Of a stretch of 64,000 nucleotides of DNA, positions 33,073-54,761 are shown in pieces; position 1 is the stretch's first letter, and the number at the start of each line of letters is the position of its first letter. Made by a program: the position numbers and the translations under genes. The stretch covers positions 1 to 64,000 of the IMG/VR virus record IMGVR_UViG_3300044712_000810. One strand, given 5' to 3'. A model generated the notes under the pieces. It worked only from the letters and a program-made list of their open reading frames with translations. It was not told the DNA's origin and did no database searches.

Positions 33073-33963
33073 ATGCTTAATGATGGATTTTATAAAAAAG
33101 TTGAAGATCCAAAATATTTAAAAAACATACTTTACGGCGATACAGACTCTTTGTTCCTTTGTATCCCAACTAAAACATCAGCAAAACAAATGTCAATTGA
33201 CGAAATTATTAAAATTTCAAAAGATACTGGTAAGAATATAAATGATTTAATTCAACAGTATATGGTTAAATATTTGTTTCCAAAAGCAAATATTGATCCT
33301 AATTTTAATAAGACTCAATTTAAAAACGAAATGATTATGTCGAGTATCATGTTCCTCGACGTTAAAAAACAGTATGCATATAAACTACTAGTAAAAGAAG
33401 GTGTTGTACTAACAGAACCTGAAACCAAATATACCGGTATTCAGATTGTTAGAACCAATACTGCAAAAATTACTAGTAAACTTTTAAGAGAAATGATTGA
33501 GGATGTTATTCTTAATCCACAAATTACAAGAAAACAACGTATTCCAAAACTTATTGAACTCGTTGATGCAAAACACAAAGTATTTAATGATTTTGCAGAC
33601 GCATGTGATTTTACCGAAATAGGTATTCCATGTAAATGGCAAAAACAAGATCAACATATTATGGGAATGAAATTATATAATTTCATAATGGAGAAAGAGA
33701 CATTTAACTTAGGATCTTCCGGAAGATTCATCTATTGCAAATTTCATGATACTAGAACATTAAATCTTTCCGGTATAGATACTGATAAATTAAACGGTAT
33801 AGTCGTACCATATTCATATGATAAAGATAAACTTCGTGATGCAATGGCTAAATATAAAATCATCATCGATAGACAAACACAATGGGACACACTGTACTCC
33901 AAGACTTGTCAACGCTTAACTGAACTAGTAAAACTGATCGATAAGAGATCAGAAGGGAAGTAA
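33073..33963 (+). CDS. Family-B DNA polymerase, C-terminal part (palm motif C + thumb)
   Basis: ILYGDTDSLF, KKQYAY, KYTGIQIVRTNT. Confidence 0.9.
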   Translation: MLNDGFYKKVEDPKYLKNILYGDTDSLFLCIPTKTSAKQMSIDEIIKISKDTGKNINDLIQQYMVKYLFPKANIDPNFNKTQFKNEMIMSSIMFLDVKKQYAYKLLVKEGVVLTEPETKYTGIQIVRTNTAKITSKLLREMIEDVILNPQITRKQRIPKLIELVDAKHKVFNDFADACDFTEIGIPCKWQKQDQHIMGMKLYNFIMEKETFNLGSSGRFIYCKFHDTRTLNLSGIDTDKLNGIVVPYSYDKDKLRDAMAKYKIIIDRQTQWDTLYSKTCQRLTELVKLIDKRSEGK

Positions 33964-34626: not shown

Positions 34627-34701
34627 TCTGGGTTAGTTCAGTGGCAGAACGTCTGGCTGTTAACCAGAATGTCGGGAGTTCGAACCTCTCACCCAGAGCC
34701 A
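34627..34701 (+). tRNA. tRNA-Asn(GTT)
   Basis: Cloverleaf: TCTGGGT/ACCCAGA, anticodon arm TCTGG-CTGTTAA-CCAGA, T arm GGGAG-TTCGAAC-CTCTC, G73, encoded CCA. Confidence 0.95.
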
Positions 34702-34906: not shown

Positions 34907-34927
34907 TACCAATTTTTTAATTTGATT

Positions 34928-35410
34928 ATGAACACATACATTATAGCAGATACACATTTTGGACATGCCAACATTATCAAATACTGTAATAGACCATTTA
35001 CCGATTTTATCGAAATGGACTATATCCTAAAACGAAACTGGAATTCAACAGTAGGAATTAATGATACTGTATGGCATCTTGGCGATTTTGCAATGTTACC
35101 AAAACAAAACATTCAACAGCTTATTCCTCAGCTTAATGGTAGGAAAAAAATAGTACTCGGAAATCATGATAGATATGAGAAACAATTCTATTTAGATTCC
35201 GGATTTGAAGAAGTATATGAACACAATGAAGTATTCTTTGAGAAGTACTCAATGTCTCATCATCCTCTCCCGAATCCTACGATCCTAAATATTCACGGTC
35301 ACGTTCACAATACAAGTTTCGACTTTAAAAGTGAATTGCACGTCTGTGTATGTGTCGAACTACATGATTACAAACCGATACTACTCAACAGTATAATACC
35401 GCAAATTTAA
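34928..35410 (+). CDS. Calcineurin-like metallophosphoesterase
   Basis: ADTHFGH, HLGDF, GNHD, SHHP, HGHVH. Confidence 0.9.
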   Translation: MNTYIIADTHFGHANIIKYCNRPFTDFIEMDYILKRNWNSTVGINDTVWHLGDFAMLPKQNIQQLIPQLNGRKKIVLGNHDRYEKQFYLDSGFEEVYEHNEVFFEKYSMSHHPLPNPTILNIHGHVHNTSFDFKSELHVCVCVELHDYKPILLNSIIPQI

Positions 35411-37359: not shown

Positions 37360-38982
37360 ATGAAGAAAGTCGTAAAATCAGTGGAAAAGGCAATTTACAA
37401 AAACCCAACAGCGACAGCAGACACTGTCAACAAACACGGCACAAAAGCTTGGACTCAGTCCGATAGCACTCGTGTCGATCAGATCATGATGACAGGTACA
37501 TTTGGAAACTCGTTCTACGCCTCCGGCGACGAACTTGTGAAAGATGCTATCGAAGTCATCGAACGCGTGGCAAAGAAAGATCCTGCGCTGCTTGCATCAA
37601 CCATCGTGAAGGGTCGTAATGACGGCTTCATCAGAACTGCACCGTTAATCGGTCTAACAGTTCTATCGATGCACGCTCCAGCTGAATTTCGTAAAATCTT
37701 CAACGATACCGTGAAAACCGGTAACGACCTTGAAGACTTCATGAAGTTCGCATCAACCATGCGTAAAGGATTCGGAACTGCAATCAAGAAAGCTATGTGG
37801 GGATGGCTGTTTGAAAAGGTAACACCTTTCTACGCAACCAAATACACAAAGCAAATCGCGAACGCAATTTCCGTTTCGCATCCAAGAACACTCGATCCTA
37901 TCTTCGATTACATCATGCAGCACACTGCTGGTAAATCGAGAAACTATGCGGCTGCTCTCAAAAAGTATCCTGCCCTTCGTGGTATGGAAGAAGCAAAGGT
38001 AGCAGTTCAAAACAAAGACTGGAAGAAAGCCCAGAAACTAATCGACGAGCACAGACTCGATCCGACTACTTTTCTTGGCATGGGAACAATGACAAAAGAT
38101 GTGTGGAAATCACTTTCTGCACAATTTGGTGTCATGGCATATCTCAAATACCTTAACAAGATCGTCCGCGAGGATGCTCTTGATCCTAAGGTAATGAGAG
38201 AAAAGCTAAAACCTGAAGTCCTGAACAAGGCAAAGGTTTTCCCATTCCGTCTTTACATCGCAAGAGAAAACATCCAGAACGCAACAGTTCGTGATCATCT
38301 CGCCCAAGTCCTCGACGACTACGGCAAGATTTACAACTGGGAATCTTGGGGTGACAAGCAATTTGTCATCGCACCAGACGTTTCTGGATCAATGGTTCAA
38401 GCTGTACGTGGATCTAAACTAACTCCAGCCACAGTTGCTGGTATGTTCAGTGGATTCCTGTACAAATTCATTCCAGGAAGTATTCTTCTTCCTTGGAGCA
38501 CTGAAGTTCGTCCGAACCTCGTGCGTCCTCGTCAGGACTCTGTTCTGACACATATCGAAAGTATTGCCCGTGCAAACGGCGGTGGAACAGCAATGGCTTC
38601 ACCGATCGATCACATGATCCGCAATAAGATCAAGTGTGACTACTTCATCGGAATCACCGATTCTGAAGAATGGTCTGCACCTGTGACCAGATATGCTTGG
38701 GGCGGACGTAGATCCGATGAAAGACAGTGGATTGATGCTTGGACTGAATACAGAAATAAAGTCAACAAGAATGCGAAAGCAATTCTTCTTCGTGTGGATG
38801 GATACCCAACACAGCCATTCGATGACAAAACAGCTAAAGAAAATGGAATTTACCAGATCTTCGGTTGGTCCGACAACGTACTCAAATACGTTGATTACGT
38901 GATCAATTCTGAAAAATATGTGGTAAAAGAAAAAGAAAAGAAAGTTGAAAAACTTGATAAATATGTAACTATCGAAAGATAG
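37360..38982 (+). CDS. Ro60/Rsr ortholog (TROVE + C-terminal vWA)
   Basis: TGTFGNSFYA, RNDGFIRTAP, FPFRLYIA, vWA MIDAS-like APDVSGSM, GGGTAMASP, ITDSEEW. Confidence 0.9.
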   Translation: MKKVVKSVEKAIYKNPTATADTVNKHGTKAWTQSDSTRVDQIMMTGTFGNSFYASGDELVKDAIEVIERVAKKDPALLASTIVKGRNDGFIRTAPLIGLTVLSMHAPAEFRKIFNDTVKTGNDLEDFMKFASTMRKGFGTAIKKAMWGWLFEKVTPFYATKYTKQIANAISVSHPRTLDPIFDYIMQHTAGKSRNYAAALKKYPALRGMEEAKVAVQNKDWKKAQKLIDEHRLDPTTFLGMGTMTKDVWKSLSAQFGVMAYLKYLNKIVREDALDPKVMREKLKPEVLNKAKVFPFRLYIARENIQNATVRDHLAQVLDDYGKIYNWESWGDKQFVIAPDVSGSMVQAVRGSKLTPATVAGMFSGFLYKFIPGSILLPWSTEVRPNLVRPRQDSVLTHIESIARANGGGTAMASPIDHMIRNKIKCDYFIGITDSEEWSAPVTRYAWGGRRSDERQWIDAWTEYRNKVNKNAKAILLRVDGYPTQPFDDKTAKENGIYQIFGWSDNVLKYVDYVINSEKYVVKEKEKKVEKLDKYVTIER

Positions 38983-39031
38983 TTTTCAGGTGGGAGTTAT
39001 TACACTCCCACCAACTACAAATTTCTAAATT

Positions 39032-39100
39032 TGCAAGGTATCAGTAATAAGTTTCAACGCACTGTTAAAGCCAAAAAGGCTTATTACATTAGTCCTTGCG
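39032..39100 (+). ncRNA. Scaffold RNA unit 1 (Asn GUU anticodon-loop cargo)
   Basis: GCAAGG/CCTTGC closing stem; GTAATAAGTTT/AGGCTTATTAC inner stem; CAAC-GC-A-CTGTTAA-A-GC. Confidence 0.8.
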
Positions 39101-39115
39101 CTTCTTTCAAATTTT

Positions 39116-39338
39116 GGAAGGTATCAGAAAAACGTTCAACGCACATGAAATGCACCCGAGTTAACACTCGTGTAGGTTCGAGTCCTACCCTTGGCACCAA
39201 TCATGGGGACCATCTAGAGAGAAAGTCGAAAGACCGCTTCAAAAGATAGCAATTAAATTTGCAGGTACCCTCCAAATTTTGCCGAGGTGGCGGAATTGGT
39301 AGACGCAGGTAAAAACAATGTTTTTCATCAGTCCTTCC
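39116..39338 (+). ncRNA. Scaffold RNA unit 2 enclosing a circularly permuted tRNA-Leu-like body
   Basis: GGAAGG/CCTTCC; 3' half 39154-39199 (variable arm, T arm, CCTTGGC-A-CCA) precedes 5' half 39281-39310 (GCCGAGGTGGCGGAATTGGTAGACGCA). Confidence 0.85.
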
Positions 39339-39347
39339 GACTTATTT

Positions 39348-39425
39348 TGTGGAGTAGAGTAGTCTGGTCTAACTCGTAGGTCTCATAAGCCTAGTACACA
39401 GGTTCAAATCCTGTCTCCGCAACCA
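39348..39425 (+). tRNA. tRNA-Met(CAT), initiator-like sequence
   Basis: TGTGGAG/CTCCGCA, D stem GAGT/ACTC, TAGGT-CTCATAA-GCCTA, ACAGG-TTCAAAT-CCTGT, ACCA end. Confidence 0.9.
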
Positions 39426-39429
39426 CTTT

Positions 39430-39523
39430 TGAAAGGTAATCCGACAAGATTCAACGTTACCATTATACGTCTATCGGGCAACTCGACGCCCGATCGAAAC
39501 CGTCTTGTCATCTAGTCCTTTCA
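39430..39523 (+). ncRNA. Scaffold RNA unit 3
   Basis: TGAAAGG/CCTTTCA; GACAAGAT/GTCTTGTC; TTCAACG; insert hairpin ATCGGGC/GCCCGAT. Confidence 0.8.
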
Positions 39524-39529
39524 CCCTTT

Positions 39530-39592
39530 TGCAAGGTAAATGAATCTGGATTCAACGGAAAACTGAAAACACCAGATTTAACAGTCCTTGCA
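39530..39592 (+). ncRNA. Scaffold RNA unit 4 (minimal; possible Phe GAA loop CTGAAAA)
   Basis: TGCAAGG/CCTTGCA; AATCTGG/CCAGATT; TTCAACG. Confidence 0.8.
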
Positions 39593-39612
39593 CTTAAAAT
39601 TTCTCACAACTT

Positions 39613-39757
39613 TTGAGAGGTAACCCCGAGTAGGTTCAACGCTATATGGAAGCCGGTGTCATCGGTTCGAATCCGATCTCCTCCATCACAAATCTTTTGG
39701 GGGAGTAGCTCAGTCTGGTAGAGCACGAAAAACAATCTGCTCAATTAGTCCTCTCAA
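39613..39757 (+). ncRNA. Scaffold RNA unit 5 enclosing a circularly permuted tRNA-Ala-like body
   Basis: TTGAGAGG/CCTCTCAA; T arm ATCGG-TTCGAAT-CCGAT and CTCCTCC-A (39661-39685) precede GGGGGAGTAGCTCAGTCTGGTAGAGCAC (from 39699); G3:U70. Confidence 0.85.
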
Positions 39758-39771
39758 CTTTTAAAAATTTT

Positions 39772-39846
39772 GGTCTAGTAGCTTAATGGTAGAGCACCTG
39801 CCTGTCGAGCAGCAAGATGTCGGTTCAAATCCGATCTAGATCGCCA
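39772..39846 (+). tRNA. tRNA-Asp(GTC), atypical anticodon arm
   Basis: GGTCTAG/CTAGATC, loop CTGTCGA, GTCGG-TTCAAAT-CCGAT, G73 and CCA. Confidence 0.85.
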
Positions 39847-39851
39847 TCTTT

Positions 39852-39970
39852 TGCAAGGTAACCCCGTGTGGTTTCAACGGAAACTAACAAGTCATCAAAA
39901 CTGGTTACAGTAGGATTCGAAGCCTACAACACCTTCGGGTGAAACGAGCCACACAAACCATGTCCTTGCA
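39852..39970 (+). ncRNA. Scaffold RNA unit 6 (T-arm-like and UUCG hairpins)
   Basis: TGCAAGG/CCTTGCA; GTGTGGTTT/GAGCCACAC; GTAGG-ATTCGAAG-CCTAC; CACC-TTCG-GGTG. Confidence 0.8.
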
Positions 39971-39981
39971 CTTAAAATTTT

Positions 39982-40067
39982 GGGGATGTTACACAAGCGG
40001 CAACGTGACCTGGCTGTAACCCAGGTGCCTTCGGGCTTCAGAGGTTCGAGTCCTCTCTTCCCCACCA
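39982..40067 (+). tRNA. tRNA-Tyr(GTA)
   Basis: GGGGATG/CTTCCCC, CCTGG-CTGTAAC-CCAGG, long variable arm, AGAGG-TTCGAGT-CCTCT, ACCA. Confidence 0.92.
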
Positions 40068-40085
40068 TTATAATTTGGAGATATT

Positions 40086-40481
40086 ATGTTTGATTTCAAT
40101 AAATGCGACAATCCAAAAAAGCAAGGTAATATTGGAATTGGTATCGCAATCGCATGGTTCGTAAAAAATGGTTGTACCGTATCTATTCCATTAACAGATT
40201 GTCAAGAATATGATCTTGTCATCGATGATATTAATGGAAAATTATACAAAGTTCAAGTTAAAACTACAACATTTAAAGAATTTAATACTTATAAAATTAA
40301 CTTAAAAACCTGTGGTGGCAATCAAAGTTTTAATACAATTAAAAAATTCGATAAAACGAAAGTAGATTTATTATTCATTGTTACCTGTGAAGGTGATATG
40401 TATTTAATTCCAACAAATAAAATAACACAAACAAATTGTTTAAAACTTGGTGAAAAATATCAAGACTGTAAAGTTACTTAA
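40086..40481 (+). CDS. Free-standing PD-(D/E)XK endonuclease (I-Ssp6803I/PDDEXK_5-like)
   Basis: KQGNIG...VSIPL.D...YDLVID...LYKVQVKT...KVDLLFI. Confidence 0.8.
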   Translation: MFDFNKCDNPKKQGNIGIGIAIAWFVKNGCTVSIPLTDCQEYDLVIDDINGKLYKVQVKTTTFKEFNTYKINLKTCGGNQSFNTIKKFDKTKVDLLFIVTCEGDMYLIPTNKITQTNCLKLGEKYQDCKVT

Positions 40482-40494
40482 AATTTCCACTTAT

Positions 40495-40577
40495 TTGAAG
40501 GGTAAACCGACAAGTTTCAACGCTCATAACGTATTCGCGCCATCTTGCGAATCTAACTTGTCACGCAGTCCCTTCAA
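40495..40577 (+). ncRNA. Scaffold RNA unit 7 (Met CAU anticodon-loop cargo)
   Basis: TTGAAGGG/CCCTTCAA; GACAAGTT/AACTTGTC; CAAC-G-CTCATAA-C. Confidence 0.8.
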
Positions 40578-40583
40578 CTTTTT

Positions 40584-40654
40584 TGTGAGGTATCAGTAAT
40601 AAGTTTCAACGCCCCTTGCACGAGCCTAAAACGCTTATTACACAAGTCCTCACA
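40584..40654 (+). ncRNA. Scaffold RNA unit 8 (Ala UGC anticodon-loop cargo)
   Basis: TGTGAGG/CCTCACA; same inner stem as unit 1; GCCC-CTTGCAC-GAGC. Confidence 0.8.
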
Positions 40655-40671
40655 TTTAAATTTCCAAATTT

Positions 40672-40805
40672 TGGAAGGTATCAAGAAACATCCAACGTTA
40701 ACTCCAAACCGGGGGTTATGGTTCAAGTCCATACATTTTGCCAAATAAGGCAGTGTAATGTAATGTAGCATACCGGTTCAACGCAGTTTCTTAAAAGTCC
40801 TTCCA
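40672..40805 (+). ncRNA. Scaffold RNA unit 9 enclosing a permuted tRNA-Trp-like body
   Basis: TGGAAGG/CCTTCCA; CTCCAAA-CCGG, T arm TATGG-TTCAAGT-CCATA, closed acceptor hairpin, then D arm ATGT/GCAT and CCGGT. Confidence 0.75.
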
Positions 40806-40812
40806 CATTTTT

Positions 40813-40880
40813 TGCGAGGTATTCTTCCAGGATTCAACGATCCTCTAAATCGAAAACGACCCTGGATATCAGTCCTCGCG
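40813..40880 (+). ncRNA. Scaffold RNA unit 10 (CGAT-CCTCTAA-ATCG stem-loop, Arg UCU-like)
   Basis: TGCGAGG/CCTCGCG; TCCAGG/CCTGGA; TTCAACG. Confidence 0.8.
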
Positions 40881-40900
40881 ACTTTTTTAAGGAGAACCAC

Positions 40901-41077
40901 ATGTGTAAAGATGAATGCACTTGCGAAGTCAAGTGTCCAATCTGTCAAGAATTGATAGATAAACATGGTGGATTATATCCAAACCAAGAAACAATCAAAG
41001 CCATCGAAGAAGTTCGAAACGGCAAAACAAAAACATTTAATTCAGTTGAAGAGTTATTTAACGAATTACACAAATAA
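40901..41077 (+). CDS. 58-aa protein: Cys-rich N-terminus plus DinJ/RelB-type C-terminal toxin-binding segment (not in ORF track)
   Basis: AAGGAG RBS; hand translation MCKDECTCEVKCPICQELIDKHGGLYPNQETIKAIEEVRNGKTKTFNSVEELFNELHK; followed by terminator CGGGTC-TTCG-GACCC. Confidence 0.75.
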   Translation: MCKDECTCEVKCPICQELIDKHGGLYPNQETIKAIEEVRNGKTKTFNSVEELFNELHK

Positions 41078-42511: not shown

Positions 42512-42525
42512 ACTTGGAGTCAACC

Positions 42526-43629
42526 ATGTCGTGTCTGGATAAATGCGCATTTCTTATTCCATATACTCAAATAGAGGCAGGTGCACAAACACAATTGTGC
42601 AACTATTTAAAAGAACCATTTTGCCTCCGCGCAGCTGTAATGCCAGACATCCATACCGGATATGCGTTACCAGTTGGTGCGGTTGTATTGCTCGAAGGAG
42701 TAATATCACCAGCAGCAGTTGGTGTTGATATAGGTTGCGGAATGTGTTGTATTCGTACAGATGTTCCGATCAAACATATCAAAGGAAAAGAAGAAAAACT
42801 ATTTAAACAAATATATTCTACTATTCCAGTTGGATTTGGTAGTCATGCAAAAAAAAGAGACTATCCTGATTTCAAATCAGCAATACTGGATAAAAAACTG
42901 GATGCAGCAATAAATTTAAAATTAAAAGAACAACTTGGAACTCTCGGTGGTGGGAATCACTTTATTGAAATTGGTGAAACACGAGAAGGAAATATAGGAA
43001 TTACTATTCATAGTGGATCACGTAATGCTGGAAAGCAAATATGTGATCATTACTGTGCATTAGCTAAAAAAATTCATACTGAATTAAAAGGTGACTTTCT
43101 ATTCTTCGATCGTGATGAAGGAAAGGCATACTTTCAAGATATGAACTTTATGTTATCATATGCATTAGAAAATCGTTTAAATATGATGGTTGACATTCTT
43201 GATATACTTGGGTTGGATCAAAATCTACTCAAGGAAATCATTAATGAGAATCATAATCATGCCGAAGATCTAGATGGAAAGATTCTGCATCGTAAAGGTG
43301 CAACACCAGCAGCAAAAGACCAATTGGGTGTTATCCCAGGTAATATGCGCGACGGTGTATATATAACTAAAGGTCTTGGCAACGACAAATATCTGTCAAG
43401 TGCAAGTCATGGAGCCGGTCGTAAAGGTTCTAGAACTTGGGCAAAACAAAAAGATACAGTCGAAACATTTGCAAAACTAATGAATGGTATTGTCGCGAAA
43501 GTTGACAAACATACATTGGATGAAGCACCTTGGGCATATAAAAAGATCGAGGATGTAATTAAAGCACAAGAAGGAATTGTGGTTGATATTATCGATCACA
43601 TTAGACCAATCATTAACATCAAAGGATAG
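42526..43629 (+). CDS. rtcB: RtcB 2',3'-cyclic-phosphate/5'-OH RNA ligase
   Basis: MPDIHTG, VGVDIGCG, LGTLGGGNHFIE, IHSGSR, NENHNH, HRKGATP, SASHGAGR, DEAPWAYK. Confidence 0.95.
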   Translation: MSCLDKCAFLIPYTQIEAGAQTQLCNYLKEPFCLRAAVMPDIHTGYALPVGAVVLLEGVISPAAVGVDIGCGMCCIRTDVPIKHIKGKEEKLFKQIYSTIPVGFGSHAKKRDYPDFKSAILDKKLDAAINLKLKEQLGTLGGGNHFIEIGETREGNIGITIHSGSRNAGKQICDHYCALAKKIHTELKGDFLFFDRDEGKAYFQDMNFMLSYALENRLNMMVDILDILGLDQNLLKEIINENHNHAEDLDGKILHRKGATPAAKDQLGVIPGNMRDGVYITKGLGNDKYLSSASHGAGRKGSRTWAKQKDTVETFAKLMNGIVAKVDKHTLDEAPWAYKKIEDVIKAQEGIVVDIIDHIRPIINIKG

Positions 43630-43950: not shown

Positions 43951-45204
43951 ATGAAGAAACTATCGAAATCTAAATTGAAAAATAGGGCATCAAGATTGAA
44001 AGCAGTAGTAGGCAGTCCAATGTCTATTGATATGGAATATTATGAGGACACTGTAAAATATCAAGGAGACAAAATGGATCAGGGCGAAGATCTGAATGTT
44101 GGTCTTACGTTTGGCGCTGACTTCGGTTATCCTGTTTATGGCGTTGTTGCCAAAGGTAAAACTGAAGAACTTCTGCGTCATGCAAACAAGACCGGTCTTT
44201 CCGAACACGAAGAATTCAACATGGTCATTGATGGAAAGAAACGTAGTGACGTATTTGAGATTTTTCGCAAATATGGTCGTTGCATGGACTTCCAAAAAAG
44301 AACTTTCGTCTGTATGGCGGAAGATGCTTACATCGGTGTTAACTTCACCGATCGTGATTCCTATAGTGGAATCTATGTTTCCTTTGACGGAAACGATAAA
44401 AACAAATTGATTGAACTTCGCAATCAAATTTATGCAGAACTTAAAGAATTTAAAAAAGTGTGCATTAACTGTGAAGTCAATTGGTATTATGCCAAAGGAT
44501 GCAATCAAGAACTTCAGTCTCAACAGATTCAGGAAGTTCTTGATGATAATGTTTATCCCGAAGCATATCCTTATATTGAAAATCTTGATGAATTCATCAA
44601 TGATTATCTTGCCGGTGATGAACAAGTTCTCATCTTCCTGGGTCCTCCCGGAACCGGTAAAACTCGTTTGATCCGCTACATTCTTAATCGTATGGTCGTC
44701 AAACAAATTGAAAAACAAGGAGTAGGTCTTAGCCGTTATGGCGATGCCTATTTCGAAGATGACGATGATGTAAATATCATGTATACTACCGATGCGAAAG
44801 TATTGGAACATGAAGAGTTCATTGTGGATTTCCTTACCAATAGGCACTCCGCAATGGTTCTTGAAGATATTGACTTTAACCTTCGTCCTCGCATGGATAA
44901 CAACACTTCCATGTATAAACTTCTTGCCTCCAGTGATGGTCTTCTGACCAACCGTGGACGTAAGATGATTATTAGTACCAACGTTGATAGCGTTGCGAAA
45001 ATCGACGAAGCTCTTATTCGTCCCGGACGTTGCTACGGCATCGTTCAATTCCAGAAACTTAATCCCGAACAGGCAAATACGTTTCTGAAAGTTATTGGCA
45101 GTGACGAAACTGTTACTGTTGAAAAAACCATTGCCGAACTTTACGCTATGAAGAAACATACTCGTAGCGGTTCTGGCAACAATATTCGCAAAATCGGATT
45201 CTAG
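43951..45204 (+). CDS. AAA+ ATPase
   Basis: GPPGTGKT, VLEDID, STN, IDEALIRPGRC. Confidence 0.9.
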   Translation: MKKLSKSKLKNRASRLKAVVGSPMSIDMEYYEDTVKYQGDKMDQGEDLNVGLTFGADFGYPVYGVVAKGKTEELLRHANKTGLSEHEEFNMVIDGKKRSDVFEIFRKYGRCMDFQKRTFVCMAEDAYIGVNFTDRDSYSGIYVSFDGNDKNKLIELRNQIYAELKEFKKVCINCEVNWYYAKGCNQELQSQQIQEVLDDNVYPEAYPYIENLDEFINDYLAGDEQVLIFLGPPGTGKTRLIRYILNRMVVKQIEKQGVGLSRYGDAYFEDDDDVNIMYTTDAKVLEHEEFIVDFLTNRHSAMVLEDIDFNLRPRMDNNTSMYKLLASSDGLLTNRGRKMIISTNVDSVAKIDEALIRPGRCYGIVQFQKLNPEQANTFLKVIGSDETVTVEKTIAELYAMKKHTRSGSGNNIRKIGF

Positions 45205-45284: not shown

Positions 45285-45497
45285 ATGAGAACAATAACCA
45301 TGGAAAATGGAAGCATGTACTATGATGAAGAATTTAATTCACTAATCATAGCCAAAAATCTTGAAAATGGCAATGTTTCCGTTTTTACACCATGTACAGA
45401 CTGGGATATAACGTTTAGGTTAGGGCGTCCACAATTTTTTACAACTGTAATAACACGAGAACAATTTAACACGTACATTAGCATGGAGGACTCATGA
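45285..45497 (+). CDS. Hypothetical protein
   Basis: GAGGAGG RBS; ATGA overlap with the vWA gene. Confidence 0.65.
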   Translation: MRTITMENGSMYYDEEFNSLIIAKNLENGNVSVFTPCTDWDITFRLGRPQFFTTVITREQFNTYISMEDS

Positions 45498-46903
45498 CAG
45501 CAAGAGACTGGATTGACGTTTGCATCTCGTTTGACACAACAGGAAGCATGTATCCCTGCCTGGGCGAAGTTCGCTCCAAGATCACCAAAATGGTGGACAC
45601 CCTGTTTTCGAAGATCCCGAATCTTCGTATCGCAATCATCGCTCATGGCGACTACTGCGATGCAGGCCGTCCTTACACCGTTAAGGTGATGGATTTCACC
45701 AACGAAAAGAACACCATCGTCAACTTCGTGAACAAGGTCGAACCGACCGGCGGCGGTGATGCACCTGAATGCTACGAACTGGTTCTCAAAACTGCGAGAA
45801 CTCTTCTCTCGTGGCGTTCCGGCACCTCCAAGTCCATCGTCATGATTGGCGACGACAATCCGCACGGACCTACCTATCCGCAGAACGTCGACAAGATCGA
45901 CTGGCAGAACGAATGCGGCCTGCTGAAAGAAGCCAACGTCAAGGTCTATGGCATTCATGCCATGCCTGGTTGCCGTCGTCACAGCGAAACCTTTTACAGG
46001 GCAATCGCTGCAAGAACCGAAGGCACCTATCTGACCCTGGACCAGTTCGCAGCGATCGAACAGCTCATTCTCGGCATCTGCTACAAACAGGACAGCGTCG
46101 AGAAACTCAACGAATACGTCGAAGTCATCAAGGTCGGTGCCGGTCGTAGCACCCTGCGTAACATCGCAGCACTCACCGGAACCACCTTCGACGAGGCCGA
46201 CTATTCAAAGAAGCACATGCCCAAGGGCCTCGTGCCGGTTCCTTCCGGCCGCTTCCAGGTCTTCACCGTTCCATCGAAGATGGCAATCAAACAGTTCGTC
46301 GTCGATCGCGGAATCCTTTTCAAGAAGGGCCGTGGCTTCTACGAGCTCACCAAGTCCGAAACCGTCCAGCAGTACAAAGAAGTCATTCTGCAGGACAAGA
46401 TCACTGGCGAATTCTACGCCGGTGCTGCCGCTCGCGAAATGCTCGGCCTGCGCCCGCAGATCGAAGGAACTTCTGGTGGCATCCACGAGAAGCTTCGTCC
46501 TGTCGATCTGGACAAATACCGCGTGTTCATCCAGAGCACCTCGGTAAACCGCGCTCTCGTCGCCGGATCTGGCTTCCTTTACGAAGTCGAAGACTGGGAC
46601 AAGAAGGGAGAGACTCTCGAAGTCAAGGAAACCATTCCTGTCGTGGTCGGAAAAACTGCCAAAGCAACCGCCAAGGCTCCGACCAAGGCGACCACCAAGA
46701 CCCCTGCCAAGGCCCCGGCCAAAAGCAGAACGAAACCCACCGTGGTTCACGCCAAGATCACCGGCTTCGTGGTCAAGATCGAAGACGACGGCAAGATCAA
46801 CATCGCAAACGCCTCCGGCGAAAAGCCTTTCATGACCATCGCCGCCGAACACAACTTGGCATCCGCTCTGCGCAAGATCGCAGAAGTCGGAGAATTCAAG
46901 TAA
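45494..46903 (+). CDS. von Willebrand factor A domain protein with Lys/Ala/Thr-rich linker
   Basis: SFDTTGSM MIDAS, TGGGDAPECYE, MIGDDNPH; GC-rich codons. Confidence 0.85.
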   Translation: MTARDWIDVCISFDTTGSMYPCLGEVRSKITKMVDTLFSKIPNLRIAIIAHGDYCDAGRPYTVKVMDFTNEKNTIVNFVNKVEPTGGGDAPECYELVLKTARTLLSWRSGTSKSIVMIGDDNPHGPTYPQNVDKIDWQNECGLLKEANVKVYGIHAMPGCRRHSETFYRAIAARTEGTYLTLDQFAAIEQLILGICYKQDSVEKLNEYVEVIKVGAGRSTLRNIAALTGTTFDEADYSKKHMPKGLVPVPSGRFQVFTVPSKMAIKQFVVDRGILFKKGRGFYELTKSETVQQYKEVILQDKITGEFYAGAAAREMLGLRPQIEGTSGGIHEKLRPVDLDKYRVFIQSTSVNRALVAGSGFLYEVEDWDKKGETLEVKETIPVVVGKTAKATAKAPTKATTKTPAKAPAKSRTKPTVVHAKITGFVVKIEDDGKINIANASGEKPFMTIAAEHNLASALRKIAEVGEFK

Positions 46904-47468: not shown

Positions 47469-47578
47469 CAAAAATTAAAGTGGGGGATGGCTTACGTCCC
47501 CCACGCAATTTGATTTCCCTTCTAAAGTTATAAAGAAATAGTTTTATAGTATAAAATCCTTGGGAATTGGGGGTAAGA

Positions 47579-49681
47579 GTGCAACAAATCCAATGTGACG
47601 ATTTAATTGACATGATTAAGTCCGACAAAATTTCTCCCTATCAATTTTATTCTACGGATATTGATTATCCACAGTATTACAGTGTTGAATATTTTTTAAA
47701 TCATCCTCATGATACTATTGAAAAAAATCAAAAGCTTAAAATCCTGTTTTTAGACATCGAAGTTTATATGCAAGGATCTACGAAATTCCCAAAACCAGAA
47801 GAAGGGGAATTTCCAGTAAGCGCAATTACAACATATTTAAATACAAAAAACAAGTTTACATCTTATTTTTTATTATTGAATAAAAACATACAAAAATTTC
47901 CAGTAGAAGATCTTGAAAAACAAAAACAAGATTATTTAAACACACTGTTACAAAATAAATATATAACAGACAAAGATACACTGGAAATTAAAATTTTTAC
48001 GAATGAAACAGAACTGTTAAAAACATTTTGGGAAGATGTAAAAACAGATGATCCAGCATGTTTAACAGGATGGAACAGCGATCAATTCGACTTACCGTAT
48101 CTATATTACAGAACGGTTAATGTATTAAATGGTGATGAAAAACGTGCTCATAAGTTAATGTCTAAATTTGGACAAGTTAAAGTTAGAGCATATGGTGGAA
48201 AAATAGTAATAGATTTTCCAGAATTTATTAATATGGATTTATATTACTTATATAAACCACGAGCAGAAGGTGGACTTGCACAAGGTAAAACTATGGCAAG
48301 TTATTCACTAGATTTCGTGTCAGAACAAATTTTAAAATTAAAGAAATTAGAATATAAAAATGAAGGTATGAGTCTGGATATGTTTTATGAAGCAGATCCA
48401 GTTGGATACTTATTATATAACATAATGGACTGTTGCCTAGTTAATTTACTTAACAATAAACTAGGACACCCAGACCGATATAACATGTTACGTCGTCTTA
48501 TGAAGACACCATTAGGTATTGCACTAAGAGGTCCTTCCGCATTATTTGATACATTCGTTTTACATGAATTGACAAGAAATGGTCAGGGCCCAAGATTTGG
48601 AATACTAGACGAAACAAGTGTAGAAATTCCAGAACATGAGATTAGACAAATACCTACACAAAAAACAAGTAAGAAAATTAAATGGGGAATTACTGAAATT
48701 TCCCAAGAAACTTATAGAGCGATAACTTGTAGATATCCTGGCGCATATGTTAAGGATTCTCCAGGTTTAATTTATGACTTGGATGATGGAATTCTAATTG
48801 ACTTAGATGCAACATCACTGTATCCAAGTATGATCTGTCAATATAATATCAGTTTCGATACATTCCATGGAAGAGTAATTGATCCTATTGTAACTAAATC
48901 ATTAGTAACAATTGATAATATTATTAAATCAAATGGACCAATTGCAGATAATATCTATATTGGTCTTTGTGACATGGCATCAAAATATGTATATAGAGAA
49001 GAATTTACAAATAAAAACGATTATACACAACAAGTGTATTATATCACATGTTATCTTATTAAGAAAATAAAAGAACATGGAAAAGAACTTGATAAGTTAT
49101 TTCATCCAAAAGACTATAAAGATTATATCGTACTTAAACGTTACTTGTTACCACTTATTGACTTACTTGAAGACTTATCATCAAACTCTGAAGAATATAA
49201 TACATTCGCCCATGACTATTTATTAATGGACAAAACTGATCCAGAAGTAAAAAGTTTATTAATAGTTGAAAATATAACGAAACCAACAATATGTGTTAAT
49301 CGTATTTTGGTCGAAGATTTTCCAAATTATCTAAAACAACAAAAACTAGTATTTACTCTAACCGGATGTTTATTCAATGAACACAATGACAAAATAAGTA
49401 TCTTTTATGAATTCCTTACAAACATGAAAAATATGCGCGATCAATATAAAAGAGATCGCGACAGTAATGAAGAAGGAAGCGAAAAGTATCGTTATTTTGA
49501 CATGATGCAGAATGCCACCAAAGTAACAATGAACTCAACATATGGTCTATATGGCATGAGTTTATTCAGATATAGTAATAAATGGTTGGCGAAAACTATT
49601 ACAATTTCCGGAAGATTAACACTAAAACTAGCACAAAGATTATCTGATGTATATATAAGTTCTCTCAAGGAAAATAATTAA
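47579..49681 (+). CDS. Family-B DNA polymerase, N-terminal part (3'-5' exonuclease, motifs A and B)
   Basis: FLDIEV (ExoI), GWNSDQFDLPYL (ExoII), YNIMD (ExoIII), DLDATSLYPS, KVTMNSTYG; lacks YGDTDS. Confidence 0.9.
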   Translation: MQQIQCDDLIDMIKSDKISPYQFYSTDIDYPQYYSVEYFLNHPHDTIEKNQKLKILFLDIEVYMQGSTKFPKPEEGEFPVSAITTYLNTKNKFTSYFLLLNKNIQKFPVEDLEKQKQDYLNTLLQNKYITDKDTLEIKIFTNETELLKTFWEDVKTDDPACLTGWNSDQFDLPYLYYRTVNVLNGDEKRAHKLMSKFGQVKVRAYGGKIVIDFPEFINMDLYYLYKPRAEGGLAQGKTMASYSLDFVSEQILKLKKLEYKNEGMSLDMFYEADPVGYLLYNIMDCCLVNLLNNKLGHPDRYNMLRRLMKTPLGIALRGPSALFDTFVLHELTRNGQGPRFGILDETSVEIPEHEIRQIPTQKTSKKIKWGITEISQETYRAITCRYPGAYVKDSPGLIYDLDDGILIDLDATSLYPSMICQYNISFDTFHGRVIDPIVTKSLVTIDNIIKSNGPIADNIYIGLCDMASKYVYREEFTNKNDYTQQVYYITCYLIKKIKEHGKELDKLFHPKDYKDYIVLKRYLLPLIDLLEDLSSNSEEYNTFAHDYLLMDKTDPEVKSLLIVENITKPTICVNRILVEDFPNYLKQQKLVFTLTGCLFNEHNDKISIFYEFLTNMKNMRDQYKRDRDSNEEGSEKYRYFDMMQNATKVTMNSTYGLYGMSLFRYSNKWLAKTITISGRLTLKLAQRLSDVYISSLKENN

Positions 49682-50481: not shown

Positions 50482-50853
50482 ATGCGTAATTTAAACAAAG
50501 TAATTCTTATCGGTAATGTTGGAAACACACCAGAGCTTAGACAAACAAAGAATAACATTCCAGTTACTAACTTTAATTTGGCTACTACTGATTATTGGAA
50601 AGATCGTAACACAGGTGAAAGTAAGAAAAACACAAAATGGCACAAAATCGTACTTTGGGGCGATGCGGCCGAAAGAGCTTGTAACTTTGTTAAAAAAGGA
50701 ATGTTAGTACTAGTTGAAGGCAGTATTTCATATCGTGAACATACTGATGATGCTGGTGTAAAACGTACGATTGCAGAAATCAAAGCAGAAAAAGTAAGAA
50801 AGCAATCATCCCCAAGATTTAGACAGAATGAGGATGATGCTTCCGATGAGTAA
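50482..50853 (+). CDS. ssb: Single-stranded DNA-binding protein (copy 2)
   Basis: LNKVILIGNVGNTPELR, TKWHKIVLWG, VEGSISYRE. Confidence 0.9.
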   Translation: MRNLNKVILIGNVGNTPELRQTKNNIPVTNFNLATTDYWKDRNTGESKKNTKWHKIVLWGDAAERACNFVKKGMLVLVEGSISYREHTDDAGVKRTIAEIKAEKVRKQSSPRFRQNEDDASDE

Positions 50854-51628
50854 TTTACCTGATATCCAAAATAGTTGTCCCGATATTAAAGTAAAACTTA
50901 ATCGAGTTGGTATTGAAGACTTTAGACTTCCAATCACTATTCTCGAAAAAGAAAATGGATATCAGAAAACAGTTGCAAGTATTAACTGTTATGTTGATTT
51001 AGATTGTAATAACAGAGGAGTCAATATGTCTAGACTCCCATTAGTATTACATGAATATAATGAAAAAATATTTAATATGAATTTACTTGCAGAAATTGCA
51101 AAAACAATTCGCGAGAATTGTGAAGCAGAAGAATCTCAAGTAATTTATAAATTTCCATATTTCATTAAAAAGAAAGCGCCAGTTACAGGATATGAAGGAT
51201 ATGTATTCTATGATGTAACTTTTGACATGACATCAAATAAGACTGGTCAAACATTCAAATTTCAAGTTAAAACTTACGCAACCAGTCTCTGTCCTTGTAG
51301 CAAAGAAATATCTGAAGATGGCGCACATAATCAGAAATGCCTCATTCAAATCGATGTAGTTCCAAAGAAAGACTCATGGATTTGGATTGAAGATATTATT
51401 AAAGTCGCTGAAAGTTCTGCATCTTGTGAAATTTTCAGCGTACTAAAACGCCCAGATGAAAAGTATGTTACAGAAAATGCATATAATAATGCGGCGTTTG
51501 TTGAAGATATAACTCGAAATGTATATGAAAAATTAACAAATATCGAAGGTATTGATACATTCAATATTGTTGTTATCTCGGATGAAAGTATTCATCTACA
51601 TAAAGCATATGCTAGATTGCATGTTTAA
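50846..51628 (+). CDS. folE2: GTP cyclohydrolase IB
   Basis: LPDIQ, RGVNMSR, SLCPCSKEIS...GAHNQ, VLKRPDEKYVTE, FVEDITR, ESIHLHKAYA. Confidence 0.92.
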   Translation: MSNLPDIQNSCPDIKVKLNRVGIEDFRLPITILEKENGYQKTVASINCYVDLDCNNRGVNMSRLPLVLHEYNEKIFNMNLLAEIAKTIRENCEAEESQVIYKFPYFIKKKAPVTGYEGYVFYDVTFDMTSNKTGQTFKFQVKTYATSLCPCSKEISEDGAHNQKCLIQIDVVPKKDSWIWIEDIIKVAESSASCEIFSVLKRPDEKYVTENAYNNAAFVEDITRNVYEKLTNIEGIDTFNIVVISDESIHLHKAYARLHV

Positions 51629-54242: not shown

Positions 54243-54761
54243 ATGGCAAAACGTCAGTATGTTTTATCAGATCGATTTTTTATATCTGTTAACGTTTTTG
54301 ATAATGGGCACCAAACAACGTCAAGAATAAATGGAACTAAAATATTTCACCATGAATCATTAAGAATAAATGAATCTGGTGATGTTTTTTATAATTTTAC
54401 ACCAAAACAAATATATCAACTATATAAAAAGCACTGTGATTGTCCTTCTGGTAACCTTATTGGATGGAAATTCGCTGGAATTGGTGGAAGAATAAAAATG
54501 AAAATACTAATTCCAAATAGTGCACAAAGACTAAACGTTATGTTTACAAATGAATGCAGAGCTGATAAAATTCAAATAATAAGTATGTGGGATCAAAAAT
54601 TTAGAAAAATAACAGAATGCACAAGTTGGTTCGACAAAAAAATTAAATACAAATGTGGAAATTCATATTACTGTAATGATTTTAACAATAACCCATTAAA
54701 TCAATATTATGCAAAAGGATTTCACTTCTATTTAACATTAAGAGATCTTTTGGAGGCATAG
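54243..54761 (+). CDS. Hypothetical protein
   Basis: GGAGG RBS. Confidence 0.7.
   Translation: MAKRQYVLSDRFFISVNVFDNGHQTTSRINGTKIFHHESLRINESGDVFYNFTPKQIYQLYKKHCDCPSGNLIGWKFAGIGGRIKMKILIPNSAQRLNVMFTNECRADKIQIISMWDQKFRKITECTSWFDKKIKYKCGNSYYCNDFNNNPLNQYYAKGFHFYLTLRDLLEA

What the first reader, a model, noticed from the sequence alone, without database searches (positions are those of the whole stretch)
39056..40852. The variable insert right after CAAC is often a canonical tRNA anticodon loop: a possible decoy panel for anticodon nucleases
Seen: unit 1 GC-A-CTGTTAA-A-GC (Asn loop, identical to that of the phage tRNA-Asn); unit 7 G-CTCATAA-C (Met loop, identical to that of the phage tRNA-Met); unit 8 GCCC-CTTGCAC-GAGC (Ala UGC); unit 9 CTCCAAA (Trp); unit 4 CTGAAAA (Phe, weaker because the A-run is shared); unit 10 CGAT-CCTCTAA-ATCG (Arg UCU-like, C33). 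Units 1 and 8 share the identical 25-nt AGGTATCAGTAATAAGTTTCAACGC and GCTTATTACA but differ in the loop, as expected for duplication plus cargo swap. Inference: Ro60-protected anticodon mimics that titrate tRNA-specific toxins and are re-sealed by RtcB, or specificity tags that direct Ro60-RtcB to particular damaged tRNAs.
Basis: partly seen in the sequence, partly recalled or inferred. Interest (0 to 1): 0.9.

Follow-up and report, generated by a model that had tools for sequence, protein, structure and literature searches.

The report
Phage Y-RNA array with anticodon-like loops
Right after its Ro60 gene, a giant phage carries ten small RNA genes that share one Ro60-type handle but have different tRNA-like tips, some ending in loops shaped like tRNA anticodon loops; this is an unusually large variant of a known bacterial system, and the idea that the loops are decoys for tRNA-cutting enzymes is untested.

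Summary
The quoted sequences are real. They lie in ten repeated units (39033-40879, + strand) that start 50 nt after a Ro60/TROVE gene and end 1.6 kb before RtcB, with three real tRNA genes between them.

The units are Y-RNA-like (Yrl) genes. Each has two covarying stems around a conserved internal loop, a conserved TYCAAC motif, then a variable tip. U2 and U5 carry full tRNA-like bodies (divergent YrlA). The others are short hairpins (YrlB-like).

The same frame recurs next to Ro60 in 21 further phage, metagenome and PVC-bacterial loci (64 units).

The anticodon-loop claim is partly right:
- In the window only U1, U7 and U8 put a Y-U-NNN-R-N heptamer in a weak 2-4 bp hairpin. U10 has C33. The U4 and U9 heptamers are not closed by stems.
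- Taking any such 7-mer near CAAC is close to chance.
- Across the family, 7-nt hairpin loops are enriched for that pattern (13 of 54 against about 3 expected). Orthologous hairpins keep U33, A37 and A38 while the triplet varies.
- In tRNA-like units the hairpin sits where the anticodon arm would be.

A decoy role is not shown; a related idea was already published for YrlA. Verdict: a new variant of a known kind, of moderate interest.

The parts
37360..38982 (+). Ro60/Rsr homologue (540 aa; TROVE plus Ro60-type vWA domains)
   Evidence: Pfam PF25045 at 3e-13 and PF05731 at 1.6e-6. 1982 relatives found, the best at 51% identity.
38989..39012 (+). Short hairpin between the Ro60 stop codon and the first unit
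   Evidence: Read from the sequence. It is not followed by a T-run, so it is not a clear terminator.
39033..39099 (+). U1, a short Yrl unit. Handle GCAAGG/CCTTGC; CAAC at 39055-39058; tip GC-A-[CTGTTAA]-A-GC with the loop at 39062-39068.
   Evidence: Found full-length by model R1, which was built only from relatives (30.5 bits, E = 7e-5). The loop equals the tRNA-Asn loop.
39116..39338 (+). U2, a tRNA-Leu-like (class II) YrlA-type unit. Hairpin GCA[CATGAAA]TGC at 39141-39153; variable arm; T arm 39172-39188; acceptor 3' strand plus ACCA 39189-39199; 81-nt linker 39200-39280; acceptor 5' strand plus D arm 39281-39306.
   Evidence: After in-silico un-permutation, ARAGORN at default settings calls a tRNA with the hairpin as its anticodon arm.
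39348..39425 (+). tRNA-Met (CAU), a real tRNA inside the array
   Evidence: ARAGORN and Rfam, 59.5 bits.
39431..39522 (+). U3, a unit with two distal hairpins (ACGT[9-nt loop]ACGT, then a 7-bp hairpin); paralogue of U7
   Evidence: R1 with filters off finds it full-length at E = 0.03.
39531..39591 (+). U4, a minimal unit whose second stem closes a 22-nt loop that starts with TTCAACG; no distal hairpin
   Evidence: R1 gives 24.2 bits, E = 0.002.
39615..39755 (+). U5, a YrlA-type tRNA-like unit. Hairpin GCT[ATATGGA]AGC at 39641-39653; T arm 39661-39677; 7-bp acceptor closed by a loop; D arm within 39699-39724.
   Evidence: Rfam YrlA RF02553 at 36.2 bits, E = 2e-5, covering the full model but below the gathering score of 69. 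Un-permuted, it is called a tRNA.
39772..39846 (+). tRNA-Asp (GUC)
39853..39969 (+). U6, a unit with three distal hairpins, one of them T-arm-like (39910-39927, 8-nt loop); its handle is paralogous to that of U5
39982..40067 (+). tRNA-Tyr (GUA)
40086..40481 (+). PD-(D/E)XK endonuclease ORF inserted in the array; probably a mobile or homing element rather than part of the system
   Evidence: Pfam PF11645 at 6e-18. tblastn found no homologue in the 112 related loci held at that point, L002-L115.
40497..40575 (+). U7, with ACG[CTCATAA]CGT (loop 40523-40529) followed by a second 7-bp hairpin
   Evidence: The loop equals the tRNA-Met loop.
40585..40653 (+). U8, a paralogue of U1 with the same handle and tip GCCC[CTTGCAC]GAGC (loop 40615-40621)
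   Evidence: R1 gives 25.8 bits.
40673..40804 (+). U9, a long unit with a T arm (40717-40733) and further hairpins, and a second CAACG near its 3' side
40814..40879 (+). U10, a short unit with CGAT[CCTCTAA]ATCG (loop 40842-40848, C at position 33)
   Evidence: R1 gives 30.5 bits, E = 7e-5.
42514..43629 (+). RtcB RNA ligase, 1.6 kb downstream of the last unit
   Evidence: Pfam PF01139 at 3e-80. RtcB homologues lie beside Ro60 in 28 related loci.

Best explanation
The region is an array of ten Y-RNA-like (Yrl) genes, probably co-transcribed with the phage's Ro60 gene and three tRNAs.

Anatomy of each RNA:
- A constant 'handle': a 6-8 bp terminal stem, an asymmetric internal loop (5' GGUA / 3' AGUCC), and a 7-11 bp second stem. 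By analogy with Y RNAs, the handle docks on Ro60.
- A conserved UUCAAC / A-rich internal loop.
- A variable tip that mimics all or part of a tRNA.

The tips:
- U2 and U5 (less clearly U6 and U9) carry T arm, D arm and a closed acceptor stem, which is the YrlA type.
- In them the small hairpin after CAAC sits where the anticodon arm would be. They are four-armed tRNA mimics with the Ro60 handle inserted at the junction of positions 26 and 27.
- The short units (U1, U7, U8, U10) keep only that anticodon-arm-like hairpin.

Inferred steps:
- RNase P and 3' processing of the interleaved tRNAs, and of the 7-bp acceptor stems of U2 and U5, release the units.
- The resulting Ro60 RNPs use the tRNA-like tips to engage tRNA-handling proteins.
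- This happens within a phage RNA-damage and repair island (RtcB, a phosphoesterase, a cyclic-phosphate-processing REC protein).

Shown: the anatomy, covariation, linkage to Ro60 and RtcB, and an enrichment of U-turn heptaloops. Inferred: Ro60 binding, processing, partners. Which anticodon a loop imitates is not shown to matter.
For: **Position**
- The array starts 50 nt after a TROVE/vWA ORF and lies upstream of RtcB.

**Repeat family**
- 10 pattern hits against 0 expected.

**Covariation**
- Terminal stem: 100% paired, with 4 of 6 pairs showing compensatory changes.
- Second stem: a unit's own partner gives a mean of 8.5 bp, mismatched partners 5.4 bp.
- U1 against U8 shows two compensatory pairs.

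**YrlA similarity**
- Full-model YrlA matches below the gathering score in U5 (36 bits) and in relatives: L013 at 41.7 and 30.9 bits, L038 at 37.1 bits.

**Independent homology**
- Model R1, built only from relatives, finds U1, U10, U8 and U4 full-length with exact ends and nothing else significant in 64 kb. With filters off it also finds U3 and U7.

**Same frame beside Ro60 elsewhere**
- Seen in L011, L013, L036-L046, L054 and L117-L123.
- RtcB is linked in 28 loci.

**Hairpin as anticodon arm**
- Un-permuted U2 and U5 are called tRNAs, with the hairpin as the anticodon arm.
- L038:7018-7148 has a 5-bp/7-nt hairpin, then AGGTC, then a T arm.

**Precedents**
- Phage phiLo Ro60 binds two Yrls and host PNPase (PMC12135203).
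Against: - The canonical bacterial Ro60-binding motif (GNCGAAN0-1G, or 'CGAA') is absent from the handle, which has GGUR / A(G/U)UCC instead.
- Rfam YrlA scores are about half the gathering score.
- No expression, end-mapping or binding data exist for this uncultured phage.
- Hairpin stems after CAAC in the window are only 2-4 bp and are marginal in MFE folds. The U5 hairpin is not in the MFE fold.
- Related units were collected with a pattern that requires the frame, and their 3' ends were assigned by complementarity. This inflates the apparent pairing in relatives.
Confidence: 0.72

Rival explanations
1. The tips are a panel of anticodon stem-loop decoys, held on Ro60. They titrate host anticodon nucleases (or mark particular damaged tRNAs) and are resealed by the phage RtcB.
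For: - Y-U-NNN-R-N heptaloops are enriched family-wide.
- Orthologous series A keeps a covarying 5-bp stem with U33, A37 and A38 invariant while the triplet varies: GAU, GAA, GAA, CCU.
- Series B has triplets UGA, CGA and GCA.
- U1 and U8 have identical handles with a replaced loop.
- The U1 and U7 loops are identical to the phage's own tRNA-Asn and tRNA-Met loops (P about 7e-4).
- The context fits: RtcB, tRNA genes, phosphoesterase, cREC protein.
- A competitive-inhibitor role for YrlA has been proposed in the literature (PMC7790460).
Against: - Window stems are 2-4 bp.
- U2 and U10 lack U33, and U4 and U9 have no hairpin.
- About half of all units lack such loops.
- The same kind of loop caps acceptor-like stems (L040:2171, L121:7444).
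- In L038, which encodes eight tRNAs, no unit loop matches them.
- An ortholog of the CTGTTAA loop reads CTAGTTA in L120.
- Salmonella YrlA was not cleaved by the SOS-induced nuclease.
- There is no biochemical evidence.
Confidence: 0.15
2. The heptaloops are generic U-turn caps. A 7-nt U-turn loop is simply a stable, protein-friendly way to close a short helix, and its resemblance to anticodon loops is incidental. The tips differ because they bind different partners or have drifted.
For: - Y-U-NNN-R-N loops also close acceptor-like stems.
- T loops fit the same pattern.
- In the window, the loose criterion is met at chance level.
- Loops vary even between close orthologs without keeping any 'anticodon'.
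Against: - In tRNA-like units the hairpin sits exactly at the anticodon-arm position.
- 5-bp/7-nt geometry with A37 and A38 recurs (L037, L040, L123).
- Two exact matches to the phage's own tRNA loops are unexpected under this model.
Confidence: 0.3
3. U2 and U5 are permuted tRNA genes. They would be matured into working tRNAs by cutting out the handle and ligating with RtcB, as happens for permuted tRNA genes in a red alga.
For: - The 3'-half-before-5'-half order, the encoded ACCA in U2 and the 7-bp acceptor stems.
- RtcB and a PD-(D/E)XK nuclease are nearby.
- Un-permuted sequences pass ARAGORN.
Against: - The handle has no bulge-helix-bulge geometry.
- The resulting anticodon stems would be 3 bp plus a mismatch, with A33 (U2) or A32 (U5).
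- Eight of the ten units have no tRNA body to mature.
- The nuclease ORF is absent from all related loci.
- The linkage to Ro60 would be unexplained.
Confidence: 0.03

Closest known systems
YrlA (Rfam RF02553), the tRNA-like Y RNA of Salmonella, Mycobacterium smegmatis and mycobacteriophages (PMC4201824)
   Same: - Encoded next to Ro60/Rsr.
- The 5' and 3' ends form a long stem.
- The distal domain has a T arm, a D arm and a closed acceptor stem.
[quoted passage not shown]
- Often linked to RtcB.
   Different: - The handle lacks the GNCGAA motif and has GGUR / A(G/U)UCC.
- An extra small hairpin sits at the anticodon-arm position, seen as an 8-nt insertion against the Rfam model.
- Scores are about half the gathering score.
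- There are ten units rather than one or two.
- U2 is a class II (Leu-like) mimic with an encoded CCA and an 81-nt linker.
YrlB / Yrn2-type short Y RNAs (PMC4201824)
   Same: They are short, rod-like hairpin RNAs co-encoded with a YrlA and Ro60, and they lack a tRNA body.
   Different: Here the tip is often a 3-5 bp stem with a 7-nt U-turn loop, set off by a conserved UUCAAC / A-rich internal loop. Several paralogues share a handle but differ in the tip.
Thermus phage phiLo Ro60 with Yrl1 and Yrl2 (PMC12135203)
   Same: A phage-encoded Ro60 with adjacent Y-RNA-like genes. Binding to Ro60 and to host PNPase was shown experimentally in that system.
   Different: - phiLo has two RNAs that carry the CGAA motif, no tRNA-like tips were described, and RtcB is not mentioned in the paper.
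- Its Ro60 is only about 22% identical to this one.
rsr-yrlBA-rtcBA RNA repair operon of Salmonella (PMC7790460)
   Same: The gene set Ro60 + Y RNAs + RtcB, and a link to tRNA cleavage. The authors suggested that YrlA may competitively inhibit an anticodon nuclease.
   Different: - No RtcA or RtcR was seen among the ORFs scanned here.
- This locus is phage-borne.
- tRNA genes are interleaved with the units.
- The RNA set is far larger.
tRNA anticodon stem-loop
   Same: A 7-nt loop with U33 and purine 37 in U1, U7 and U8. Relatives have 5-bp stems with C-U-NNN-A-A loops.
   Different: Window stems are 2-4 bp, with mismatches. Several loops break the U33 or Y32 rule. No anticodon arm is recognised without artificially rearranging the sequence.

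Membership tests
Y RNA / YrlA (Rfam RF02553) | Encoded within about 2 kb of a Ro60/Rsr gene, on the same strand | tested here: met
   The Ro60 ORF ends at 38982 and U1 starts at 39033. The same arrangement is seen in 21 related loci.
Y RNA / YrlA (Rfam RF02553) | The 5' and 3' ends pair into a long stem interrupted by an internal loop or bulge | tested here: met
   MFE folds and covariation.
Y RNA / YrlA (Rfam RF02553) | Conserved Ro60-binding motif GNCGAAN0-1G (bacteria) or GGUCCGA (metazoa) on the 5' strand | tested here: not met
   The handle instead has NNNNGG-U-R on the 5' side and A-(G/U)-UCC on the 3' side. The only GUCGAAAG lies in the U2 linker, where one chance hit is expected.
Y RNA / YrlA (Rfam RF02553) | tRNA-like domain with a T arm, a D arm and an acceptor-like stem | tested here: met
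   Met for U2 and U5. U6 and U9 have a T arm only. U1, U3, U4, U7, U8 and U10 have none.
Y RNA / YrlA (Rfam RF02553) | Score at or above the Rfam gathering threshold (69 bits) | tested here: not met
   The best score in the window is 36.2 bits. Relatives score 31-42 bits.
Y RNA / YrlA (Rfam RF02553) | Physical binding to Ro60 | not testable with these tools
   This needs immunoprecipitation or a gel-shift assay.
tRNA anticodon stem-loop mimic | A 5-bp stem closing a 7-nt loop | tested here: not met
   In the window the stems are 2-4 bp: U1 2 bp plus A-A, U2/U5/U7 3 bp, U8 3 bp plus a C-A mismatch, U10 4 bp. The feature is met in relatives L037, L038, L040, L041, L121 and L123.
tRNA anticodon stem-loop mimic | Y32-U33 ... 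R37 in the loop | tested here: inconclusive
   In the window, 3 of 6 heptaloops fit (U1, U7, U8). Family-wide, 13 of 54 fit against 3.6 expected. The same pattern also caps other stems.
tRNA anticodon stem-loop mimic | Recognised or cleaved by anticodon-specific enzymes | not testable with these tools
   This needs biochemical assays.
Permuted tRNA gene | 3' half before 5' half, with a processing motif that restores a normal anticodon arm | tested here: not met
   The half order is met in U2 and U5. There is no bulge-helix-bulge motif, and the restored arm would be defective, with A33 or A32.
rsr-yrl-rtcBA repair operon | Ro60, Y RNA(s) and RtcB together, usually with RtcA and the regulator RtcR | tested here: inconclusive
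   Ro60, the Yrls and RtcB are present. No RtcA or RtcR was found among the ORFs scanned, but not every ORF in the window was scanned.

The most novel reading that the evidence does not exclude
Ro60-bound Y RNAs of this phage and PVC-bacterial clade display anticodon-arm mimics whose three central loop bases are a fast-evolving specificity element. In this reading they act as decoys or competitive inhibitors of host tRNA-anticodon nucleases, or as address tags that bring Ro60 and RtcB to particular damaged tRNAs. That would be an RNA-based, multi-specificity counter-defence.
Probability: 0.15. Interest if true: 0.85.

Novelty: new variant of a known kind. Interest (0 to 1): 0.55.

Why it matters
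**What the finding adds**
- Y RNAs are known as Ro60 partners and tRNA mimics, but what the bacterial and phage versions do is largely unknown.
- This locus gives a ten-member set with one handle and many tips, plus a wider clade in PVC-bacterial MAGs and phage-like contigs. The clade is not captured by the Rfam model at its threshold.
- The layout suggests a modular design: a Ro60 dock plus an exchangeable tRNA-like or anticodon-arm-like module.

**Why it could interest the phage-defence field**
- The locus sits with RtcB and other RNA-end-processing genes.
- tRNA-cutting defences and phage tRNA countermeasures are an active research topic.
- If the tips engage anticodon-directed enzymes, this would be a new RNA-based way for a phage to blunt such defences.
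- It would also give the Ro60 field a testable function.

**If the decoy idea is wrong**
- The array still extends the known architecture: a four-armed mimic with the handle inserted at positions 26/27, and a different handle motif.

Tried and rejected
1. **Exact-frame scan of IMG/VR.** It found only the source contig (IMGVR_UViG_3300044712_000810). The six other hits were single, array-less and judged random.
2. **blastn against GenBank phages.** No close relative. It matched only tRNAs and a YrlA-like stretch in Rhizobium phages.
3. **The search for homologous proteins.** It timed out and was then switched off. I replaced it with the search of protein representatives and alignment-driven locus scans.
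4. **A general nested-stem scanner.** It gave nearly as many hits on the wrong strand (70 against 93) and was dropped in favour of a signature-based scan.
5. **Automatic 3'-end assignment.** It mis-set a few long units, so I used it only for the own-versus-cross stem control.
6. **Permuted-tRNA / RtcB-splicing idea.** Rejected: no bulge-helix-bulge motif, defective loops, and the nuclease ORF is unique to this phage.
7. **Loops matching co-encoded tRNAs in relatives.** Only L038 has tRNAs, and there is no match.
8. **Queuosine link** (the UGU in the U1 loop, and FolE2 at 50828-51628). No Que or Tgt genes were found among the neighbouring ORFs scanned, so this was dropped.
9. **Rhizobium phage array as a replicate.** It has the same overall design, but only one weak heptaloop, GC[ATTGTAA]GC, so it adds little.
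10. **Two reviews could not be read**.


Full report
**Where the finding sits**

- The window is the first 64 kb of a 314,837-bp IMG/VR contig, so this is a jumbo-phage-sized genome.
- The finding lies between a 540-aa ORF with Ro60-type TROVE and vWA domains (37360-38982) and an RtcB RNA ligase (42514-43629).
- ARAGORN and Rfam find real tRNAs inside the region: Met 39348, Asp 39772 and Tyr 39982. A tRNA-Asn lies at 34627.
- A terminator-like hairpin precedes the Ro60 gene and another follows a small ORF at about 41080. None lies between them, so Ro60 and the array may form one transcription unit. This is an inference.

**The observation**

- The pattern TTTGNNRGGTAN{9,16}TYCAACG hits ten times in 64 kb, all between 39030 and 40839 on the + strand, against zero in shuffles.
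- The ten units are U1 39033-39099, U2 39116-39338, U3 39431-39522, U4 39531-39591, U5 39615-39755, U6 39853-39969, U7 40497-40575, U8 40585-40653, U9 40673-40804 and U10 40814-40879.
- The U1 and U7 heptamers equal the anticodon loops of the phage tRNA-Asn and tRNA-Met.
- U1 and U8 share the 25-nt and 10-nt handle pieces. They differ by two compensatory pairs in the terminal stem and by a replaced loop.

**Anatomy**

- Each unit folds into four parts:
  - a 6-8 bp terminal stem;
  - an asymmetric internal loop (5' GGUA..., 3' ...AGUCC);
  - a 7-11 bp second stem;
  - a distal part that always begins with (U)UCAAC and often ends with an A-rich stretch.
- The terminal stem is 100% paired in 12 short units, with compensatory changes at 4 of 6 pairs.
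- The second stem has a different sequence in nearly every unit, yet it pairs with its own partner (mean 8.5 bp) far better than with partners from other units (5.4 bp).
- U5 matches the whole Rfam YrlA model at 36 bits (E = 2e-5, below the gathering score of 69). The match shows an 8-nt insertion just after the position aligned to CAAC.
- U2 has a class II, tRNA-Leu-like body, laid out in this order: hairpin, long variable arm, T arm, acceptor 3' strand with A-CCA, an 81-nt linker, then acceptor 5' strand and D arm.
- U6 and U9 have T-arm-like hairpins.
- The remaining units are short rods.

**Relatives**

- GenBank phages hold no close relative, and an exact-pattern scan of IMG/VR found only the source contig.
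- A full HMMER search found Ro60 relatives up to 51% identical.
- An alignment of 24 of them drove locus scans of viral, metagenome and genome collections.
- The same frame lies beside Ro60, on its strand, in L011, L013, L036-L046, L054 and L117-L123. In these relatives it reads 5' GAGGUG, 3' AUUCC, with UUUCAAC.
  - That makes 64 units, of which 56 are non-redundant.
  - The units usually lie just upstream of Ro60.
  - They lie downstream of it in the window and in L038, a 220-kb contig that also carries tRNAs and a tmRNA.
- The closest genome hits are MAGs of Lentisphaerae, Victivallaceae and Kiritimatiellae from rumen and gut. This hints at the host group.
- tRNA-like units in relatives also give full-model YrlA matches below threshold.
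- A covariance model built only from ten short units of relatives finds U1, U10, U8 and U4 full-length with exact ends and nothing else significant in the window. With filters off it also finds U3 and U7.
- RtcB lies beside Ro60 in 28 of the fetched loci.
- An unrelated example is Rhizobium phage RHph_TM30. It has about eight unannotated Yrl-like units with the canonical GUUGCGA-type motif upstream of its TROVE gene, including a Leu-like permuted unit resembling U2.

**The anticodon-loop claim, tested**

*In the window*
- Y-T-NNN-R-N occurs at 7-9% of positions, so a match somewhere in the first ten positions after CAAC is roughly a coin flip.
- Six units (U1, U2, U5, U7, U8, U10) have a short hairpin with a 7-nt loop right after CAAC.
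  - Only U1, U7 and U8 have canonical loops, and their stems are 2-4 bp.
- Two exact matches to the four in-window tRNA loops are unexpected for random sequence (expected 0.039, P about 7e-4).
  - The test is post hoc.
  - By my estimate it weakens to about 0.01 if the loops are assumed to be CUNNNAA-type.

*In the family*

| Test | Observed | Expected | P or shuffle result |
|---|---|---|---|
| First hairpin within 8 nt of CAAC, at least 3 bp stem, 7-nt loop (23 of 43 units have one): canonical loops | 5 | 1.5 | P about 0.015 |
| Same hairpins: U at position 33 | 11 of 23 | by composition | 0.017 |
| Same hairpins: purine at position 37 | 19 of 23 | by composition | 0.0007 |
| 56 non-redundant units, non-T-loop hairpins, at least 4 bp stem, 7-nt loop: canonical loops | 13 of 54 | 3.6 by composition; 2.5 in shuffles | 4e-5; 0 of 2000 shuffles reach 13 |

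*Orthologous series*
- Series A has a covarying 5-bp stem, invariant U33, A37 and A38, and loops CTGATAA, CTGAAAA, GTGAAAA and CTCCTAA.
- Series B has (A)ATGA/TCAT(T) stems with loops CTTGAAA, TTCGAAG and CTGCAAA.
- Series C has ACGT[CTGTTAA]ACGT in two loci and CTAGTTA in a third. U7 looks homologous to it.

*Counterpoints*
- Two of the 13 canonical loops cap acceptor-like stems.
- T loops fit the same pattern.
- About half of the units have no such loop.
- I chose the thresholds after seeing the data, and some orthologs remain in the set.

**What the hairpin is**

- I joined the acceptor-5'/D-arm half of U2 or U5 to the stretch that starts right after CAAC.
- ARAGORN at default settings calls the result a tRNA, with the hairpin as its anticodon arm.
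- In L038:7018-7148 the hairpin (5 bp, 7-nt loop) is followed by AGGTC and a T arm, as in a real tRNA.
- So in this clade the Ro60 handle is inserted between the D arm and an anticodon-arm equivalent. In classical YrlA the handle replaces the anticodon arm (PMC4201824).
- The short units keep only that arm.
- This explains why the tips look like anticodon loops without requiring that a particular anticodon matters.

**Mechanism**

- Shown: a conserved, covarying RNA frame; tight linkage to Ro60 and frequent linkage to RtcB; modular evolution of the tips; enrichment of U-turn heptaloops.
- Inferred from the Y RNA literature (PMC4201824, PMC12135203, PMC7790460):
  - The handle docks on Ro60.
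  - tRNA processing releases the units and may split U2 and U5 at the acceptor, as in M. smegmatis YrlA.
  - The tRNA-like tips tether or compete for tRNA-handling proteins during infection.
- The decoy reading is possible and extends a published suggestion. Nothing here shows cleavage, titration or resealing.

**Verdict**

- This is a real and unusually large Y-RNA-like gene array, and a new architectural variant of a known family.
- The anticodon-loop resemblance is partly real at the family level and weak in the window itself.
- The decoy function is unproven.

Noticed in passing
window 39116-39338 (linker 39200-39280): U2 encodes a Leu-like class II tRNA mimic with discriminator A plus CCA and a 7-bp acceptor stem. 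RNase P and 3' processing could therefore split it into two pieces with a tRNA-like open end. The 81-nt linker folds on its own and contains a GUCGAAAG string that fits the canonical Rsr-binding motif, but one such hit is expected by chance.
   Followed up: partly
window 40086-40481: A PD-(D/E)XK endonuclease ORF (PF11645) sits inside the RNA array, just after tRNA-Tyr. No homologue was found in any of the related loci held at that point (L002-L115), so it looks like a mobile insertion.
   Followed up: partly
window 40901-41077: A 58-aa ORF right after U10 has two CxxC pairs and a C-terminal stretch resembling RelB-type antitoxins (E = 3e-4, below the Pfam cutoff). It could be a stand-alone antitoxin-like counter-defence protein.
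   Followed up: no
window 34922-35410: A calcineurin-like phosphoesterase ORF lies upstream of Ro60. Homologues lie beside Ro60 in eight other fetched loci (L022, L077, L083, L099, L104, L107, L111, L112). It may be an RNA end-healing enzyme belonging to the same island.
   Followed up: partly
window 43951-45204 and 45494-46903: An AAA+ ATPase and a separate vWA-domain protein lie directly downstream of RtcB. Ro60 itself carries a vWA domain.
   Followed up: no
window 54243-55102: A DUF5758 protein is followed by a 113-aa protein with a cyclic-phosphate-processing receiver domain (PF20274, 8e-20). This is further RNA-end-processing content in the same genome region.
   Followed up: no
window 33073-33963 and 47567-49681: Family B DNA polymerase matches are split between two ORFs 13.6 kb apart on the same strand. 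The piece matching later profile positions lies upstream of the exonuclease/N-terminal piece, and the Ro60-Yrl-RtcB island lies between them.
   Followed up: no
window 57729-57824 (- strand): ARAGORN calls a 96-nt tRNA-Thr here. It lies inside a 666-aa ORF and Rfam does not support it, so it is probably a false positive.
   Followed up: partly
window 39100-40890, spacers between units: Every unit is preceded by TTTTG and followed, after 3-4 nt, by a T-run. These may be leaky terminators or processing or protein-binding tails. The flanks are not conserved in relatives.
   Followed up: no
L009 4590-5770 (Rhizobium phage RHph_TM30, MN988521.1, about 139.2-140.4 kb): About eight unannotated Y-RNA-like units with a GTTGCGA...ATCTC frame lie upstream of the annotated TROVE gene. 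They include YrlA-like, Leu-like permuted and non-permuted tRNA-like versions.
   Followed up: partly
L116-L124 (genome contigs) and L038: The closest Ro60 relatives come from Lentisphaerae, Victivallaceae and Kiritimatiellae MAGs from rumen and gut, and L117-L123 among them carry the same RNA frame. This suggests the phage's host group. L038 (a 220-kb contig) pairs six units with seven tRNAs and a tmRNA.
   Followed up: partly
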